Under the pieces are notes generated by a model. The model did not search any database. It saw only the letters and a program-made list of their open reading frames with translations, and was not told where the DNA came from. A stretch of 10,064 bases of DNA from assembly GCF_006345805.1 (NCBI RefSeq), contig NW_021827697.1, positions 1 through 10,064 of the forward strand, given 5' to 3'. The stretch is from Octopus sinensis. Taxonomy: Eukaryota. A program made the position numbers and the translations under genes. Within the stretch, counting starts at the first letter, position 1. The number at the start of each line of letters is the position of its first letter. This document shows, one piece after another, positions 1 to 9,330 of this stretch.

Positions 1-1
1 A

Positions 2-355
2 AGGCTGCTGCGTGAGGCCGGCCGCGAGGTGTTCCCTACTGCGGCCGGTCAAGTGTGTCCGGTGATGCACGAGGCCCGGATGGGAGGCGGCCGCTGCCGC
101 CGCTGCTGCCGCAGACACATGAGAAGACAAGAGGGCCGATGTGGTGTGCAATGTGTATCGAGAATCGTCCACCAGTAATGCTGCATCCTCGTTGTTTACC
201 ATACCAAGAATATTTCGAATGGAATGTGGCGTTGGTTGTTTGGGAGGTTTTTCGTAAATGTGTGGATGCCAAGTCCGAGGGGTTGTGTACAGTTTTGGGG
301 TCGCACCGAACATGTGCGATAGGCCCATTGCGTGAGGATCTATCCCACAATACAT
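2..355 (-). CDS. 5' part of a coding exon (runs off the window) of a probable developmental transcriptional repressor, likely homeobox (ANTP/NKL-like); family not assigned
   Basis: Hand translation from ATG at 355 gives 118 stop-free codons: MYCGIDPHAMGLSHMFGATPKLYTTPRTWHPHIYEKPPKQPTPHSIRNILGMVNNEDAALLVDDSRYTLHTTSALLSSHVSAAAAAAAAASHPGLVHHRTHLTGRSREHLAAGLTQQP. An in-frame TAA lies upstream at 403-401. GC rises sharply below 355. PTPHSIRNILG resembles the eh1 Groucho-binding motif, and a mixed-codon Ala9 run is present. No homeodomain is visible inside the window. Confidence 0.75.
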   Translation of the reverse strand, partial: MYCGIDPHAMGLSHMFGATPKLYTTPRTWHPHIYEKPPKQPTPHSIRNILGMVNNEDAALLVDDSRYTLHTTSALLSSHVSAAAAAAAAASHPGLVHHRTHLTGRSREHLAAGLTQQP

Positions 356-1154: not shown

Positions 1155-1542
1155 ATGTATATAAAAGGTAATACAAAAAATGGGACAAGAACGCAAAACA
1201 TCCAGACAGATGATACAAAAAGGACAAGAAAAACAAGGACGGGTCCTTCGGAGCTTTCGTTCCTCAGTCGAGTTCCAGATTATCTTTGCAATTTCGGCTG
1301 GTTATACTCGAAATTGCTCCAATCTGGCCAGCCCCAAGGAAAAACTAAGCTAAAAGCACTGGCCAGATTGGGGCAATCTCAAGTATAACCACCCGAAATT
1401 GCAAAGATGATTTGGAACTCTACTGAGGAAAGAAAACTACGAATGACCCGTCCTTGTTTTTTCTTGTCCCTTTTTTTGTAGCTTCTAGCAGTCTGGATGT
1501 TTTGCGTTCTTGCTCCATTTTTCTATTCCCTTTTATATACAT
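1155..1542. mobile_element. Foldback / MITE-like long inverted repeat (arms ~1155-1331 and ~1359-1542, 27-nt loop)
   Basis: The inner 101 bp of the arms align with 11 mismatches (AAACAAGGACGGGTC...CAATCTGGCCAG). The outer parts align with small indels. Ends are ATGTATATAAAAGG...CCTTTTATATACAT, embedded in TA/TATG repeats. The inverted repeat is certain; the element class is inference. Confidence 0.8.
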
Positions 1543-2762: not shown

Positions 2763-2852
2763 ACGAGTAACGGATGACAGAAATAGGGAGTACCACGAAT
2801 GATACCTCCTCCAAAACTAGTTACATATACTAGTTTTGACCAGTTTTTTTTT

Positions 2853-3075
2853 CTACCCACAAGGGGCTAAACACAGAGAGCGCAAACAAGGACAGACAAA
2901 CGGATTAAGTCGATTATATCGACCCCAGTGCGTAACCGGTACTTATTTAATCGACCCCGAAAGGATGAAAAGCAAAATCGACCTCGGCGGAATTTGAACT
3001 CAGAACGTAACGGCAGAAGAAATACCGCTAAGCATTTCGTTCGGCGTGCTAACGCTTCTGTCAGCTCACCGCCTT
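2853..3075 (-). mobile_element. tRNA-derived SINE, near full length
   Basis: The minus strand starts AAGGCGGTGAGCTGACAGAAGCGTTAGCA (A-box-like), carries B-box GAGTTCAAATTCC (3001-2989), and ends before an A-run. It is homologous to copies at 3230-3321 and 3444-3606 in this window. Confidence 0.8.
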
Positions 3076-3229
3076 ACACATACGAAACACGTATGTTATC
3101 AGCTGTGCCATGATAAAATGACCATTATGGTGATGGCATCGATTACACAACAAGAATAGCAACAACAACAATAACAATATTAAATAACTATTGTCTGTAA
3201 TTTAAGCACGAGGCCAGCAATTTCCACTT

Positions 3230-3321
3230 CAATCAACTCCAGTACATGTCTGGTACTTTGTTTTATCGACCTCAGAATGAAGAGTACAACAGATGATCAC
3301 GGCGGAATTTGTACCCAGATC
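3230..3321 (-). mobile_element. SINE fragment related to 2853-3075
   Basis: CCAGTACATGTCTGGTACTTTGTTTTATCGACC...GGCGGAATTTGTACCCAGA aligns with CCAGTGCGTAACCGGTACTTATTTAATCGACC...GGCGGAATTTGAACTCAGA. Confidence 0.6.
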
Positions 3322-3443
3322 ATGAAAAGCAAACTCTGCGATGTATTTTTTTTCGGCGCTCAACTGATTCTGCCAAATCAATCCCTCATAATAATAATTC
3401 TTCCCAGTTTTGCCAGAAAGTCAATAAATTTGAAGGGAAAAGT

Positions 3444-3606
3444 ATATCGATTATATCGTCCCCTGAATTGTCACTGGTGCTTTATTTTTATCAACTTCGA
3501 AAGATGGAAGGCAAAGTTGACATTTGGCGGGATTCGAACTCAGAATGTAACGAGCCAGACGATATGCTGCCAAACATTTTGTCCGATGCGCGAGCGATTC
3601 TCCCAA
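3444..3606 (-). mobile_element. Diverged SINE copy related to 2853-3075, truncated just before its 5' end
   Basis: ATCGATTATATCG...GGCGGGATTCGAACTCAGAATGTAA...AAACATTTTGTCCG aligns with the 2853-3075 copy; similarity stops at ~3606. Confidence 0.65.
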
Positions 3607-6320
3607 GAGGTAGCTTGGATTAAGAAGAACATCCTGGCAGAGGTACAACTGGTGTAGATGTTGCTGAACCATTTTTGCGAAGTGAAACACTGAATTTGGA
3701 ATGTCCGAGCTAAGACACCATCCCTTAGATGCAAAGGCGTGACGGACGGCCATGTGACAGCCATTTCATAAGTTCATATGGCAGAACCACGATGTTAAAC
3801 AAGCGAAGCTACAATGCAGTCTCTGACGGACCATGATTGGTACATGTCATGTAAATCAAGACGGTTTGTCAGAGACTCTCTGGGGAAAAGCGGCCGAATG
3901 GAGATGCTGGGCGTCTGTGTCTATCTGACGCGAATATCACCGGAGAGAGCAGAGAGCTGTGAAAATCAGACACAGAGAACTGAGTCACGTGAGTCGATGA
4001 GAAGTTATCGTAGGGGGATCTATTCGTCTAGCTTCAATGGCTTGCTCTATAAATTTTACACATACGTGAACAGCTAGACTTTGTTGACGTTCTGGAGCTG
4101 TTGTAATGTGATGCGATCTGTCAAAGTACCGTTAATATTTTCAGGCCCGTAACTCTGCTGAGTGACAGTTTAAGAATTTGGTCAATATCTGCCGCAGAAG
4201 TTACTGTTTGTCGTTGACAAATCGCCGGGAATGCACAGAACTGTTTATATCCCGAAAGCTCCATCAATCCATGACAAACTTCAATTTATGCAATGAATAG
4301 CAGATACGACAGGTAACAAACGTAACTTGGATAGTCTCCGTTCAATTCGGACCAATCGAAATTTTTGACTTTGTTGAGTGACCATTGCTACCTTGTGGCT
4401 ATCCTCAGTGCAGCTGGCTTTAGTCCTAATATCAGGTGCCAGATCGCGGCTTTCTATATTGTCATTGGCTTGGTGGTCAGAATAAACTACCATCAATTGG
4501 ATTGGTTCGAATCACACGCTCTCTTCGTCAAGTTTGTCCTTTCTCTTCATTTCTGAAAGTTTCGACTCCTAAACCAGGAGATATTGAAAAGTAACCCACA
4601 GGAACTTAAATTCGAGCTTTTCTCGAATGTGTGCCCGCGTGAACGACAGCGTGATAGAATCCTAGAATACTTGGTAATAGGTACCGTATTGAAAGAATTC
4701 AATGGTAGGGATTAGCATTAGAAGCACGTTTATTCCAGGGATTGTAAACCCGGCAAGTGATTTTGTAACTCGACATCCAGAGAAACAAAACCCAGAAGAC
4801 ACATAAATCACTGAATCGAAATTCTGGTTACAAGGAATTTAGTTTGACCTGGGCTTCCAGGTGGAAAAAGGTCGAGGTTATAAACAGGATGTGTAGTCTT
4901 TCTCAGAAATAAGCAGAGAGCAAGATTTCATTGAAAAGTCGGACAAGAGGTAAAGAATACTTATATCGCCACCTTTATATTATTTAGCACGTTAATGCCA
5001 TGTCTTGTTTTTGTTCACGTCTGACCAGATGAGAACCTATGTCCTTTCACTTCTTGTGGAAGAAAGGAGTTCCATCAATGGTTTGGTGCTTCATCTACTG
5101 CCAACATCTGGGGGTTCATCTTCTGCAGACATCAGTACGGTGAACCCCGTGGCTGGAACTGCGCATCTATACGCTGAAGCTGCGGTTCCTGATAAGCAAC
5201 AGGCGTGGTTACCGTTTGTCAGTTACGTCTTCTTACAGATCCTCTCTTTGACGGAGCTACAATCCTGATTTTATAGACGACTAAGATTGAGCTTATGACG
5301 TCTAGAATCTTACCAAGCGTCCTAAGTCCTCAATCCGTTGGATGATGCTACTGCTGAAGGTCGACGTTTCCATTGTACAGAGAACTGATAAAACTGATAT
5401 AAGCGATAAAACTTTGGGGAAATTCTGGACGAAAATGAACTGAACTATGTTTACCCAAAATCTTTTTGCTCGGACTATTTCCAGAACATTCTGACCTGGC
5501 AGTGCTACCAGGGCATTTTAAAGGAAGTACCGAATCAGTGTACCGTTAAGCGAACTCTATCCGCGATGTGTGGAGGGCGACAAAACCATCAGTGCACCTA
5601 TGTCGTAAGAGTGTCCAAGTATCGTTTAAACGTGGAGCTAATTGCAACTTGTAGGACAACTACAGCCGAGTTGATGTTTAGGATTGCTCTGCCATCTTTT
5701 CCACCGGAGTGGGGACAGTTTTCGTCAGCCTGATCGCTCTACAATTAAGCGGTACTTGGACATTGTTACGAGATACGTGCACTGGCGGTTTCTTCGTCCA
5801 GCGCACATCGCGGATGATGTCCTCTTAACGGTACAGTGATGGGAAAGTTCCTTCAGCGTGACCTAGTAGCACTGCCAGGTCAGAACTTTCTGGAAATTGT
5901 GAAAGAGTAATGTGAATGAAGTCTCTATGCCATATACTTTCTTTTTCGACTCAGCATTTCACCAAATTTATCAAGCACAACTCGGAAAGAAGGAAGTGAC
6001 CGTGAGGAGGGCAGTACAGCCGTCCATTATATTTGGTTTAGGTTGGTAAGAAGGGCGGGTGCGGCCCATATGAATAGATTTATGTACCTGTATATCGGAG
6101 ACTAGCGTTAGCGGTAGGGAGAGGTTTCTCGATAGCAAGACGAATTCGAAATACGCTGGGTTACTCGACTCGAGCAACATTATCGAACTTGCTAGTCGCT
6201 CATTGGGAGGCATTTTTCTTTCATGCTCCCGAATAAAGTTTACAAGTATCGGTGGGAACTTGTAAATGTTATGGGCACAGCTCCTTCTTCCTCCAGACTT
6301 AGACTTAGCCCCACAAAAAT
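3607..6320. other. High-complexity island of unknown origin (possibly a very old decayed retroelement)
   Basis: Roughly 40-50% GC by eye, CpG-rich and microsatellite-free, unlike its flanks. All frames are broken by stops. Only weak retroelement-like peptide fragments are visible, e.g. FIPGIVNPASDFVTRHP at 4729-4779. Confidence 0.5.
5474..5900. repeat. Gap-free diverged inverted repeat: 167-bp arms (5474-5640, 5734-5900), 93-nt spacer
   Basis: Base-by-base alignment: position i pairs with 11374-i throughout, with 38 mismatches in 167 (77% identity) and no indels. Confidence 0.95.
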
Positions 6321-6456
6321 GTAAAACTAACAAAAAGGCAACAAAGACAAAAGGTGAAAAGAAAATGTGAAATTTACTTTCATATTTTGTATCAGATGAC
6401 TAACCCCACCGTTAGACTCCACCGAAAAATAATTTGCCTTGTGGCAGTAGTAGAGA

Positions 6457-6524
6457 ACTACTACTACTACTACCAATACTACTACTACTGCTACAGCCGC
6501 TGCTACTGCTGCTGTTGTTGTTGT
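6457..6524. repeat. Compound (TAC)n/(TGC)n/(TGT)n microsatellite
   Basis: Direct reading. Confidence 0.9.
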
Positions 6525-6883
6525 CAAGTTTACGATTACAACATGCAACAATAAAAAAATTACAATGATAAAGGTGCTGATAATCACACACACACACGCA
6601 CGCACTCACAGACACACACACGTACACAAGCTTATGTAGTTTCAAATATTGGTTTAGTTTTACTTTATACACATTTTATGCGTGCGAACAAGTCCGAAAA
6701 TACATATACATATATTACATTATACATGTATATAATTCTTCACATGGACCTCGAACCCACAAGAGTAAACAAGAGAGACAGAGAAAGGCAGAAACAAGGA
6801 AAATGCCACTTGTATTTGAACACTATACAAATATTCTTTTAAAAAAAGTTTTCTTTTGATTCTTCTAAATTTAATTATTTAAT

Positions 6884-6930
6884 CGTTACAGTTGAAAAGG
6901 TCTCAAATGACCGAAAACGGTACTGAAATG
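6884..6930 (+). ncRNA. Degenerate minimal type-I hammerhead-like motif (Penelope type)
   Basis: Helix I CGTTACAG/CTGAAATG (7 of 8 pairs), core TTGAAAA (vs CUGANGA), helix II GGTC-TCAAAT-GACC, then GAAA-ACGG-T-A. Topology is complete, with two core substitutions (C3, G8). Confidence 0.5.
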
Positions 6931-6974
6931 TTCTTTATAAAATTATTTTAGCATTTTCTATCTTGACTTGTTTT

Positions 6975-6978
<4 letters not shown>

Positions 6979-7029
<51 letters not shown>

Positions 7030-7064
7030 ATATATATATACATATTTATATATATATGTATATA

Positions 7065-7123
<59 letters not shown>

Positions 7124-7387
7124 TTATTATATATGTATATATATATCTTATACAGGCATACAAACATGCACACGTGTGAGTGTATGTCTGTATGTATATA
7201 TATATATATAATATGTGTGTGTGTGTGTGTGTATGTGTGTATTCTATCGCACACACGTGCAGATACATACATATAGCTATAGATGAAAATACGTGTATAC
7301 ATTCACCTTCCTTTGAGCATGACTGCGTGGTTAGTAATAAAAATAAATAATTATACATGCAGGCCTATATGTATATAATATATAATA

Positions 7388-7444
<57 letters not shown>

Positions 7445-7509
7445 CATATATAACACACACAAATATATACACATATATACTAAGACACACATATACACAT
7501 GCATTTCTC

Positions 7510-7557
<48 letters not shown>

Positions 7558-7623
7558 TATAATAATATTATATATTGTATATATATATATGTATAGACAT
7601 ACATACATACATACATACATACA

Positions 7624-7656
<33 letters not shown>

Positions 7657-7761
7657 TCATGATCATTTCATCCCTCCTTTTTCCCTCTTTCGCAAACACT
7701 GTCTCACCTCCTCCCTCCCTTCTCTCCTACCATTGTATTATCATTACTATTATCATTATCG

Positions 7762-7849
<88 letters not shown>

Positions 7850-8036
7850 CATTATTTTTCTTCCATTTTTTTTTCTTTTTTCACAATTTTTTCTCGTCAG
7901 TAAATTCTTTTCAGTGAAGAAATCAAACTTTGTTCCTTAAATGTCGTGCTATTTAAATTTGAAACGCTCACGAAAGCGTTTGTTAATTATCGCAATGCTG
8001 ATAATCATTATTATTCTAATGATGAACAATATTGAG

Positions 8037-8080
<44 letters not shown>

Positions 8081-8269
8081 TACAACGGAATATGCGAGCA
8101 TATATACATACATACAATGTGCGTGCGTGCGTGTGTGTGTGTGAGTGTGTATGTGTGCGTGTATGATTATATACTTAATACACACACACATACATTCATG
8201 TATATGTCATATGCAAATACGGATAGCTACATATATAAACACAAAACACAAACACTCGCACATTCTAAA

Positions 8270-8314
<45 letters not shown>

Positions 8315-8330
8315 CACACATTCACACACA

Positions 8331-8368
<38 letters not shown>

Positions 8369-9076
8369 CTACATACATATACATACATAGATACATACAT
8401 ATGCATACATACCTTGTGTTTATATAGATACATGTATTTACATACATATATTGATACATAGATAGATAGATAGACACAAACACATACACACACACACACA
8501 TACACACACACATATCCTATTTTTAAAGCGATTTTTTTCTTAATTTTTGTGGGTTTTCTGTTTGTATTTTCAGGTGGCTTTCGTCATCGTCATCGTCGTC
8601 ATCGTCATCGCCGTCGTCGTCATCGTTATCGTCGTTGTCGTGGTCGTCATCGTTGTCATGATTACCGTTCCTATTGTCATTATAATTATCGTTTTTGTTG
8701 TTTTGCTGCTGCTACTGTTGTTGTTGTTGCTGTTGTTATTGTTTTGCAGATTGTTGTATTACGTTTCGAGCAAGTACAACTTATTGATAATTTCTTAATT
8801 TCTCTCCTTTTTAAATGTTTCTTCTTTTTTCTTTTTTAAATTTTTGTCTCATGCTTTAAGAATAGCTTTTGTTAAACTGTGACATGCTTTTAAATTCGCG
8901 CACACACACACACACATACACACACATACACACACATACACATATATATAGAGAGAGCATGTATGCTATATGTAAATATATATATTATATATATATTATA
9001 TTTTTATATAAATATATATATTACATATATCTATATGTGTACATACATACATGTATGTATATATATATATATAATC

Positions 9077-9147
<71 letters not shown>

Positions 9148-9163
9148 CATACATACATGTATG

Positions 9164-9205
<42 letters not shown>

Positions 9206-9330
9206 ACACAACACTGCATGCATAATATGTATATGTATACATATACATCGACATACTTGGCCTTATTGCTATTGTTGCTGTTATTGTTACTGCTGCTGCT
9301 GCTGTTGTTGTTGTTGTTGTTGTTGTTGCT
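6979..9330. repeat. Microsatellite field: (TA)n, (TG)n, (CATA)n ~7597-7652, (ATT)n ~7763-7855, (CAT/CGT)n ~8581-8660, (GTT/GCT)n ~9262-9330
   Basis: Direct reading; only short unique spacers lie between the repeats. Confidence 0.95.
7317..7334 (+). mobile_element. SINE head stub (A-box only)
   Basis: GCATGACTGCGTGGTTAG matches 1951-1968 at 17 of 18 positions. Confidence 0.35.

What the first reader, a model, noticed from the sequence alone, without database searches (positions are those of the whole stretch)
5474..5900. Old but indel-free 167-bp inverted repeat hidden in unique-looking DNA
The arms are 77% identical (38/167 mismatches) yet strictly gap-free, separated by 93 nt, and not annotated by any ORF (seen). 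23% substitution with zero indels is unusual for neutrally decaying DNA in a slippage-prone genome, which suggests length constraint or a special origin (inference). Mismatches are about half transversions, and wobble-compatible changes favour neither strand (10 plus, 9 minus). Simple RNA-stem selection therefore does not explain it. Possible roles are a long hairpin RNA/endo-siRNA source, an editing substrate, or an invertible cassette.
Basis: seen in the sequence. Interest (0 to 1): 0.8.

Follow-up and report, generated by a model that had tools for sequence, protein, structure and literature searches.

The report
Old inverted duplication inside dead LINE
The 167-bp inverted repeat is real, but it is a decayed retrotransposon (LINE) fragment that long ago copied a piece of itself backwards onto its broken end; it is an ordinary relic of DNA repair or replication error, with no sign of function.

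Summary
The arms are 5474-5640 and 5734-5900, with 38/167 mismatches (19 transitions, 19 transversions), no gaps and a 93-nt spacer. G·U-compatible mismatches number 10 on the plus strand and 9 on the minus strand.

The DNA is not anonymous. A profile built from genomic copies of an APE-type LINE (Exo_endo_phos, RVT_1 and zf-RVT domains) aligns colinearly to the + strand from about 3664 to about 5733. That alignment runs through the left arm and the spacer. The right arm is the reverse complement of profile positions 1539-1707 only, and it starts where the + copy stops. DNA from 5901 onward is single-copy.

Against the family consensus, both arms share 37 substitutions, several indels (a net -14 nt frameshift) and an in-frame TAA. 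Private changes are balanced, 14 versus 11. No other copy of the arms was found in the 2.7-Gb genome.

The best reading is one local inverted duplication of an already dead LINE segment, by template switch or fold-back repair (four-point order 3-2-1-4), followed by neutral decay.

Zero indels is only mildly unusual. The same LINE copy shows 0.065 indels per substitution, so 2.5 indels are expected and P(0) is about 0.085. No evidence supports a hairpin-RNA, editing or invertible-cassette role, and expression could not be tested. Interest is low.

The parts
3664..5733 (+). Decayed APE-type LINE (non-LTR retrotransposon) ORF2 fragment, truncated at both the 5' and 3' ends. It contains the left arm and the spacer.
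   Evidence: An nhmmer profile of 11 family copies aligns colinearly: HMM 174-1833 to window 4130 to about 5740, E = 1.2e-123. An upstream profile hits 3664-3970, E = 8e-6, in the expected register. tblastn with a family ORF matches 5206-5514. Family copies carry Exo_endo_phos, RVT_1 and zf-RVT. The window copy is too decayed for Pfam itself. The 5' limit is approximate.
5474..5640 (+). Left arm. This is the original segment, the zf-RVT (CCHC) region of the LINE ORF2, profile positions about 1539-1707.
   Evidence: It is colinear with LINE sequence on both sides. Conceptual translation reads ...FQNILTWQCYQG... then, after a frameshift...YPRCVEGDKTISAPMS*ECPSIV.
5641..5733 (+). The 93-nt spacer. 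It is the continuation of the same + strand LINE copy (profile about 1708-1825), is not inverted, and would form the loop of the hairpin.
   Evidence: The real spacer adds 16.6 bits to the profile alignment compared with shuffled spacers. None of 200 shuffles reached the real score, and the alignment reaches HMM 1822 at window 5726. On its own the 93-nt piece is too short to score.
5734..5900 (-). Right arm. This is a reverse-complement copy of 5474-5640, attached where the + strand LINE copy ends.
   Evidence: The nhmmer minus-strand hit covers HMM 1539-1707 at 5900-5740, E = 5.6e-13, with the envelope ending at 5902 and 5733. With the left arm it shares 37 substitutions, the net -14 nt frameshift and a TAA stop relative to the family consensus.
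5901..6450 (.). Right flank. It is single-copy DNA with no LINE homology and marks the outer breakpoint (5900/5901) of the duplication.
   Evidence: No profile hit on either strand at E <= 10. A search of the genome found only the locus itself for 5901 to about 6450; the only other matches fall in the trinucleotide repeat at about 6455-6525.

Best explanation
A copy of an APE-type LINE inserted here on the + strand, about 3664-5733, and decayed. It acquired a frameshift and a stop codon in the zinc-knuckle (zf-RVT) part of ORF2.

Later, a single DNA-level event appended a reverse-complement copy of 167 nt lying 93 nt upstream (5474-5640). The copy was added at the point where the LINE copy now ends (5733/5734). 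The result joined to unrelated DNA at 5900/5901, and at least about 470 nt of the LINE 3' end is missing.

The geometry is L->1 (...5733), 2->3 (5640->5474, complemented), 4-> (5901...). This is the '3-2-1-4' template-switch pattern. Equivalently, it is a fold-back of a resected 3' end that primes on its own strand.

Since then both arms have decayed neutrally, to 23% raw difference (K2P 0.27). The hairpin potential is a by-product of the duplication.

What is shown: the LINE identity, the colinearity of the left arm and spacer, the inverted partial copy, the shared defects and the balanced private changes. What is inferred: the molecular mechanism (template switch versus break-induced fold-back), that loss of the 3' end was part of the same event, and the absence of function.
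For: The core 20-mer of the arms has 305 genomic matches at <=2 mismatches, against 0 for the reversed control. Family copies encode Exo_endo_phos, RVT_1 and zf-RVT. The profile aligns to the + strand at 4130 to about 5740 with E = 1.2e-123, and to the - strand at 5900-5740 for HMM 1539-1707 only. The upstream profile extends the + copy to 3664. The spacer is LINE-homologous in + orientation, with 0 of 200 shuffles reaching its score. The arms share 37 substitutions against the family consensus, and have 14 and 11 private changes. They share the frameshift (70 nt instead of 84 nt between LTWQCY and PRC) and a TAA stop. Against 28 other family copies the arms need 8-15 gaps to align, but none against each other. 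No other genomic copy of the arms or the whole element was found. The nearest relatives of the LINE copy are 67-89% identical over less than about 200 nt. The right flank is single-copy. The template-switch '3-2-1-4' type is described as creating inverted repeats (PMC5453318, read). Fold-back templated inverted insertions at breaks appear in PMC11724301, PMC3907307 and PMC7467729 (abstracts listed).
Against: No outgroup or empty-site sequence was available, so the state before duplication was not seen. Microhomology at the two junctions cannot be judged after 23% divergence. A copied tract of 167 nt is longer than the events of tens of bp in the cited template-switch and yeast fold-back work, and much shorter than the human kb-Mb fold-back duplications. 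Zero indels in the arms sits in the lower tail (P about 0.085; 2% of family pairs at 70-85% identity are gap-free). The contig is a 10-kb unplaced scaffold and read support was not checked. Transcription was not tested, so a secondary RNA role is not excluded.
Confidence: 0.78

Rival explanations
1. Two independent insertions of the same LINE subfamily landed in opposite orientation. Later deletions trimmed them to the present tail-to-tail pair.
For: The arms do belong to a dispersed family with hundreds of copies. Nested or inverted LINE fragments occur at other loci, L007 and L022. Some family copies are 3'-truncated: L008, L013, L017.
Against: Both arms share a frameshifting net -14 nt, an in-frame TAA and 37 substitutions that are absent from the family consensus. 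An active master element could not carry these defects. No third copy with these features was found in 2.7 Gb. The minus fragment has neither a 3' end nor any upstream sequence, and it begins within a few nt of where the + copy ends.
Confidence: 0.06
2. The inverted segment arose during retrotransposition, through a twin-priming-like event or a reverse-transcriptase template jump, from a transcript of an already defective LINE.
For: LINE insertions are known to carry inversions (twin priming; this is from my own knowledge, not tested here). A young head-to-head palindrome of the same family exists at L007.
Against: Twin priming gives 5' ends meeting head-to-head and keeps the 3' end. Here the 3' ends converge, neither part has the LINE 3' end, and 167 nt is duplicated. 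The bottom strand would need sense-strand LINE DNA to be made from a cDNA template before antisense synthesis.
Confidence: 0.05
3. The locus is a functional long-hairpin RNA locus (an endo-siRNA/hpRNA source or an ADAR editing substrate) whose length is under constraint.
For: The predicted hairpin is very stable on either strand. There are no indels in 167 nt despite 23% substitution.
Against: Thirty-eight mismatches interrupt the stem. G·U-compatible changes are symmetric, 10 vs 9. Private changes are balanced, as expected for neutral decay. The absence of indels is within chance (P about 0.085). There is no Rfam family. The hairpin is a direct by-product of the duplication.
Confidence: 0.05
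4. The repeat is an assembly or library artefact, such as a chimeric palindromic read, in a small unplaced contig.
For: The window is the whole of a 10,064-bp unplaced contig, C4168. L007 shows a 99%-identical palindrome of the kind artefacts can produce.
Against: Artefactual fold-backs give near-identical arms running to the end of the read, with indel-type errors. Here the arms are 167 nt long and 23% different, by substitutions only.
Confidence: 0.03

Closest known systems
Template-switch mutations, four-point model type '3-2-1-4' (Löytynoja & Goldman 2017, PMC5453318; also PMC8794818 on hairpin creation)
   Same: A reverse-complement copy of a nearby upstream tract is placed downstream. 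The spacer keeps its orientation, a new inverted repeat or hairpin appears in one step, and no selection is needed.
   Different: The copied tract is 167 nt, whereas the described events are mostly tens of bp. The return point lies outside the LINE, so at least about 470 nt of LINE 3' sequence is lost. The ancestral state was not observed here.
Fold-back (snap-back) inverted duplications at DNA breaks (PMC11724301 in yeast, mostly about 5-34 bp; PMC3907307 in human, large; PMC7467729)
   Same: An inverted duplication with a short single-copy spacer sits at a breakpoint, next to unrelated sequence (abstracts).
   Different: The size falls between the two documented classes. Junction microhomology cannot be tested after the arms have decayed.
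L1 5' inversions by twin priming (Ostertag & Kazazian 2001; from my own knowledge)
   Same: A LINE copy contains a segment in the opposite orientation.
   Different: Twin priming joins 5' ends head-to-head, keeps the 3' end and tail, and leaves at most a small overlap. Here the arrangement is tail-to-tail, there is no 3' end, and 167 nt is duplicated.
TE-derived hairpin RNA loci and inverted-repeat ADAR substrates (hpRNA loci, inverted Alu pairs; from my own knowledge)
   Same: Inverted TE-derived arms could fold into a long dsRNA.
   Different: There is no evidence of transcription. Pairing is only 77%, with no signature of maintenance.
MITE / foldback-type palindromic repeats, such as the element at window 1229-1461
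   Same: Two inverted arms separated by a short spacer.
   Different: The element at 1229-1461 is built from a unit of about 145 nt with at least 1858 first-look candidates genome-wide. The 5474-5900 structure occurs once, and its arms are internal LINE coding sequence with no target-site duplication.

Membership tests
Non-LTR retrotransposon (APE-type LINE) fragment | Colinear homology to ORF2 (reverse transcriptase through the zinc-knuckle region) of a dispersed family whose members carry Exo_endo_phos, RVT_1 and zf-RVT | tested here: met
   nhmmer E = 1.2e-123 over 4130 to about 5740; upstream extension to 3664; Pfam hits on family copies.
Non-LTR retrotransposon (APE-type LINE) fragment | A protein domain recognisable in the window's own translation | tested here: not met
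   Pfam finds nothing in the X-masked frames of 3600-5480 or in the arm translations. The copy is too decayed, and only tblastn and the DNA profile detect it.
Non-LTR retrotransposon (APE-type LINE) fragment | 3' end or tail present, as expected of a primary insertion | tested here: not met
   The + copy stops at about profile position 1825-1833, while family copies run to about 2200-2370. There is no LINE homology after 5900. It is therefore a truncated relic.
Template-switch / fold-back inverted duplication | The new tract is the reverse complement of a nearby tract, and the original is colinear with ancestral sequence on both sides | tested here: met
   The left arm and spacer are colinear with the LINE profile, and the right arm is the minus-strand copy of HMM 1539-1707 only.
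Template-switch / fold-back inverted duplication | The arms are each other's closest relatives (one event, not two insertions) | tested here: met
   37 shared derived substitutions, shared indels and a shared stop; 14 vs 11 private changes; 0 gaps between the arms versus 8-15 gaps to any other copy; no other copy in the genome.
Template-switch / fold-back inverted duplication | Microhomology at the switch points, and the pre-event state seen in an outgroup | not testable with these tools
   The junctions have diverged by 23%. The genome has no relatives in the collections (header).
MITE / foldback transposon | Multiple genomic copies with the same terminal inverted repeats and a target-site duplication | tested here: not met
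   Only the locus itself was found with the 427-nt and 167-nt queries. The flanks 5464-5473 and 5901-5910 share no direct repeat.
L1-type twin-priming inversion | Head-to-head junction of 5' ends, with the 3' segment keeping the element's 3' end | tested here: not met
   The arrangement is convergent (3' ends adjacent) and both parts lack the 3' end.
hpRNA / miRNA / known structured RNA | A match to a curated RNA family, or evidence that pairing is maintained | tested here: not met
   No Rfam hit at gathering threshold. Wobble-compatible changes are 10 vs 9, and 38 of 167 pairs are broken.
hpRNA / ADAR substrate | Transcription across the hairpin; small RNAs or A-to-G editing clusters | not testable with these tools
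Invertible DNA cassette | Near-identical inverted repeats able to recombine, with both orientations of the spacer present | tested here: not met
   The arms are 77% identical, and the longest perfect run is the core of about 20-26 nt. The spacer is in the ancestral LINE orientation. Read-level orientation was not testable.

The most novel reading that the evidence does not exclude
If this region is transcribed, the LINE-derived fold-back would make a hairpin of about 170 bp. This could plausibly happen in a large invertebrate genome with heavy RNA editing, but the organism was not identified with the tools. Such a hairpin could serve as a de novo source of endo-siRNA or as an ADAR substrate. 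The lack of indels would then reflect weak selection to keep the arms in register. That would make it an example of a template-switch event creating a regulatory hairpin from dead transposon sequence.
Probability: 0.04. Interest if true: 0.4.

Novelty: new member of a known kind. Interest (0 to 1): 0.12.

Why it matters
It matters little beyond annotation. The case shows that an apparently anonymous old inverted repeat can be resolved into a dead LINE fragment plus one inverted self-copy. It is a clean, datable example of a mid-sized (167-nt) template-switch or fold-back duplication, a size poorly covered by published surveys. It also warns that 'indel-free' arms delimited by ungapped extension are weak evidence for constraint. 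Such hairpins are raw material for new small-RNA or editing substrates, but nothing here indicates this one has been recruited.

Tried and rejected
1. Whole-genome DNA searches with the 427-nt element and with one arm found only the locus itself. A multi-copy mobile hairpin is therefore rejected.
2. Pfam on the window's own translations (arms, and three frames of 3600-5480) gave nothing. The LINE identity had to come from family copies and DNA profiles.
3. blastn of the window against 28 family loci matched only about 40 nt around the core, plus 4231-4486. The profile search was needed to see colinearity.
4. The spacer alone, the right flank and 3000-4129 gave no hit to the first profile. The spacer question was settled by a shuffle test and the upstream question by a second profile.
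5. A lenient gapped alignment 'extended' the repeat into 5308-5471 / 5901-6051 with many gaps. I rejected this as over-alignment, because the profile shows no minus-strand LINE homology beyond 5902.
6. Rfam found no family in the window.
7. Twin priming was rejected on geometry.
8. I tried to identify the organism from assembly statistics through the literature, without success. I suspect from memory that it is a cephalopod assembly, but this is untested and nothing rests on it.
9. The first alignment of the loci mixed strands, because minus-strand hits are not re-oriented. I redid it with the correct strands.

Full report
**Observation.** The inverted repeat is present as described. The repeat finder lists it as the longest inverted pair in the window: 5474-5638 and 5736-5900, 165 nt, 78% complementary. 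In the fixed register i + j = 11374 the arms run 5474-5640 and 5734-5900. That is 167 nt with 38 mismatches (19 transitions, 19 transversions) and a 93-nt spacer. An aligner with mild gap penalties also introduces no gap. G·U-compatible mismatches number 10 for the + strand RNA and 9 for the - strand RNA. The best ungapped inverted-repeat score in 4000-6500 is 54, against a mean of 11.5 and a maximum of 15 in 30 shuffles. Either strand folds into one long hairpin: -235 kcal/mol (z = -19.7) and -213 kcal/mol (z = -17.2).

**Context.** The window is the whole of contig C4168 (10,064 bp) of a 2.72-Gb assembly with 13,516 contigs. The genome is a microsatellite-rich eukaryote. The tools did not identify the organism.

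**What the arms are.** The most conserved 20-mer of the arms, TTCTGACCTGGCAGTGCTAC, has 305 matches with at most 2 mismatches in the genome. The reversed control has none. I examined 28 of those loci. They hold copies of one non-LTR retrotransposon family, most of them 5'-truncated and degenerate. Open frames from these copies hit three Pfam families:
- zf-RVT, E = 5e-9 and 1.4e-8, and RVT_1, E = 5e-11.
- Exo_endo_phos further upstream, E = 2.5e-10.

The arms correspond to the stretch ...NFQ.(S/F)L(T/A)WQCYR.ALPVRDKLYRHG...CPRC...DETV.HAL.QCP of ORF2. The window copy is too decayed for Pfam, but tblastn with a family ORF aligns 5206-5514 and 5528-5635 on the + strand, and 5898-5866 and 5813-5787 on the - strand.

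**Anatomy.**
- A DNA profile of 11 family copies aligns colinearly to the + strand from 4130 to about 5740 (profile 174-1833, E = 1.2e-123). On the - strand it aligns only from 5900 to 5740 (profile 1539-1707, E = 5.6e-13).
- A second profile of the region further upstream extends the + copy to 3664, in the expected register (E = 8e-6).
- The 93-nt spacer belongs to the + copy. With the real spacer the alignment scores 116.3 bits and reaches profile 1822 at window 5726. With 200 shuffled spacers the mean is 99.7 and the maximum 103.6.
- Beyond 5900 there is no LINE homology on either strand, and 5901 to about 6450 is single-copy.
- Most family copies (19 of the 28 loci) run on to profile positions of about 2130-2370, so the window copy lacks at least about 470 nt of its 3' end.

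The resulting structure is: dead LINE(+) about 3664-5733, then the reverse complement of its own 5474-5640 at 5734-5900, then unrelated DNA.

**One event or two insertions?** The arms were aligned with the 28 family copies and compared against confident consensus columns:

| Category | Positions |
|---|---|
| Identical in both arms and the consensus | 76 |
| Both arms share a state different from the consensus | 37 |
| Private to the left arm | 14 |
| Private to the right arm | 11 |
| All three differ | 5 |

- The arms also share every length difference from the family. There are 70 nt instead of 84 nt between the LTWQCY and PRC codons, which is a frameshift. Both carry the same in-frame TAA, reading ...PMS*ECPS and ...RIS*QCPS.
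- Against any other family copy each arm needs 8-15 gaps for 71-77% identity. Against each other they need none.
- Genome searches with the whole element, one arm, or the upstream 1.3 kb found no close relative. The best matches are 67-89% identical over less than about 200 nt.
- The same search method readily recovered dozens of copies (at least 1858 first-look candidates) of a different repeat in the window, so the negative result is meaningful.

The common ancestor of the arms was therefore an already defective, locus-specific sequence. The right arm is a local inverted duplicate of the left.

**Mechanism (inferred).** Reading left to right, the sequence follows the LINE to 5733. It then continues with the complement of 5640 back to 5474, and resumes in unrelated DNA at 5901. 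In the four-point description of template switching this is order 3-2-1-4. That type is reported to create an inverted repeat and, with its mirror case, made up 31% of high-confidence human-chimp events (PMC5453318). The same product is expected if a resected 3' end at a break folds back and primes on its own strand. This has been documented for short templated inverted insertions in yeast and for large human duplications (PMC11724301, PMC3907307, PMC7467729; abstracts). I cannot distinguish these variants, and microhomology at the junctions is unreadable after this much decay. Twin priming does not fit, because the 3' ends converge and neither part keeps the element's 3' end.

**Is 'no indels' remarkable?** Only mildly.
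- Over 4130-5473 the same LINE copy differs from its profile consensus by 493 substitutions and 32 indel events, a ratio of 0.065. The 38 substitutions between the arms therefore predict 2.5 indels, and P(0) is about 0.085.
- Among 221 pairs of family copies with 70-85% identity in the arm region, 2% were gap-free under the same aligner. Those pairs include differences between subfamilies.
- The arms were delimited by ungapped extension, which biases towards gap-free tracts.
- The transition:transversion ratio of 1:1 is somewhat lower than the 289:204 seen for the LINE copy against the profile. With 38 sites this means little.
- The balanced private changes (14 vs 11) and the strand-symmetric wobble counts point to neutral decay of both arms.
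- The K2P distance between the arms is 0.27, or about 0.14 per arm. The duplication is old, but younger than the decay that killed the LINE copy.

**Function.** No evidence for function was found. There is no Rfam family. The arms are too diverged for efficient homologous inversion, and the spacer sits in the ancestral orientation. The hairpin energy follows directly from the duplication. Whether the locus is transcribed, diced or edited cannot be addressed with the tools here. I give that reading about 4-5%.

**Verdict.** The 'special origin' is right, and RNA-stem selection is rightly excluded. The length constraint and the proposed functions are not supported. The feature is an ordinary, if neat, relic: a mid-sized inverted self-duplication at the truncated end of a dead LINE. 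It is a new instance of a known kind, and its interest is low.

Noticed in passing
window 1229-1331 / 1359-1461: A second inverted repeat: 103-nt arms, 89% complementary, 27-nt spacer. It is built from two inverted units of a very abundant repeat of about 145 nt (at least 1858 first-look candidates). Most copies are single units at 90-95% identity. The full palindromic form of about 260 nt also occurs at G000:C15:24344148, C13:44038079 and C4:56070082. It looks MITE- or SINE-like.
   Followed up: partly
L007 (G000:C3:54254260-54257279), locus coordinates about 816-2072: A young head-to-head palindrome of the same LINE family's 3' part plus flanking sequence. The arms are about 620 bp, with 608 matches, 6 mismatches and 3 gap events, and the spacer is 17 nt. 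A third copy lies 0.5 kb away. It is either a recent fold-back duplication or an assembly artefact.
   Followed up: partly
window 2845-3077 and 3417-3605: Copies of another dispersed short repeat. The motif GGCGGAATTTGAACTCAGAACGTAACG occurs three times, at 2986, 3301 and 3526. It matches non-LINE parts of loci L021, L023, L015 and L026 at 73-93% identity, so it is probably a SINE. No Rfam hit reached the gathering score (tRNA families included); no tRNA scan was run.
   Followed up: no
window 1-350: A GC-rich start of the contig (43% GC against 20-30% further on) with a (GCC)n-like tract at 84-112 and an open frame of about 110 codons. It could be an exon or CpG-island edge.
   Followed up: no
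window 6450-9330: The right part of the contig is mostly microsatellite: (TA)n, (TG)n/(CA)n, (ATT)n at about 7760-7850, (GTC/GTT)n, and (TACA)n. These generate most of the other 'inverted repeats' listed (I2-I25), which are low-complexity artefacts.
   Followed up: no
L022 (G000:C20:26287153-26290172): A nested or rearranged cluster of fragments of the same LINE family on both strands within 3 kb, so complex LINE-on-LINE arrangements are not rare in this genome.
   Followed up: no
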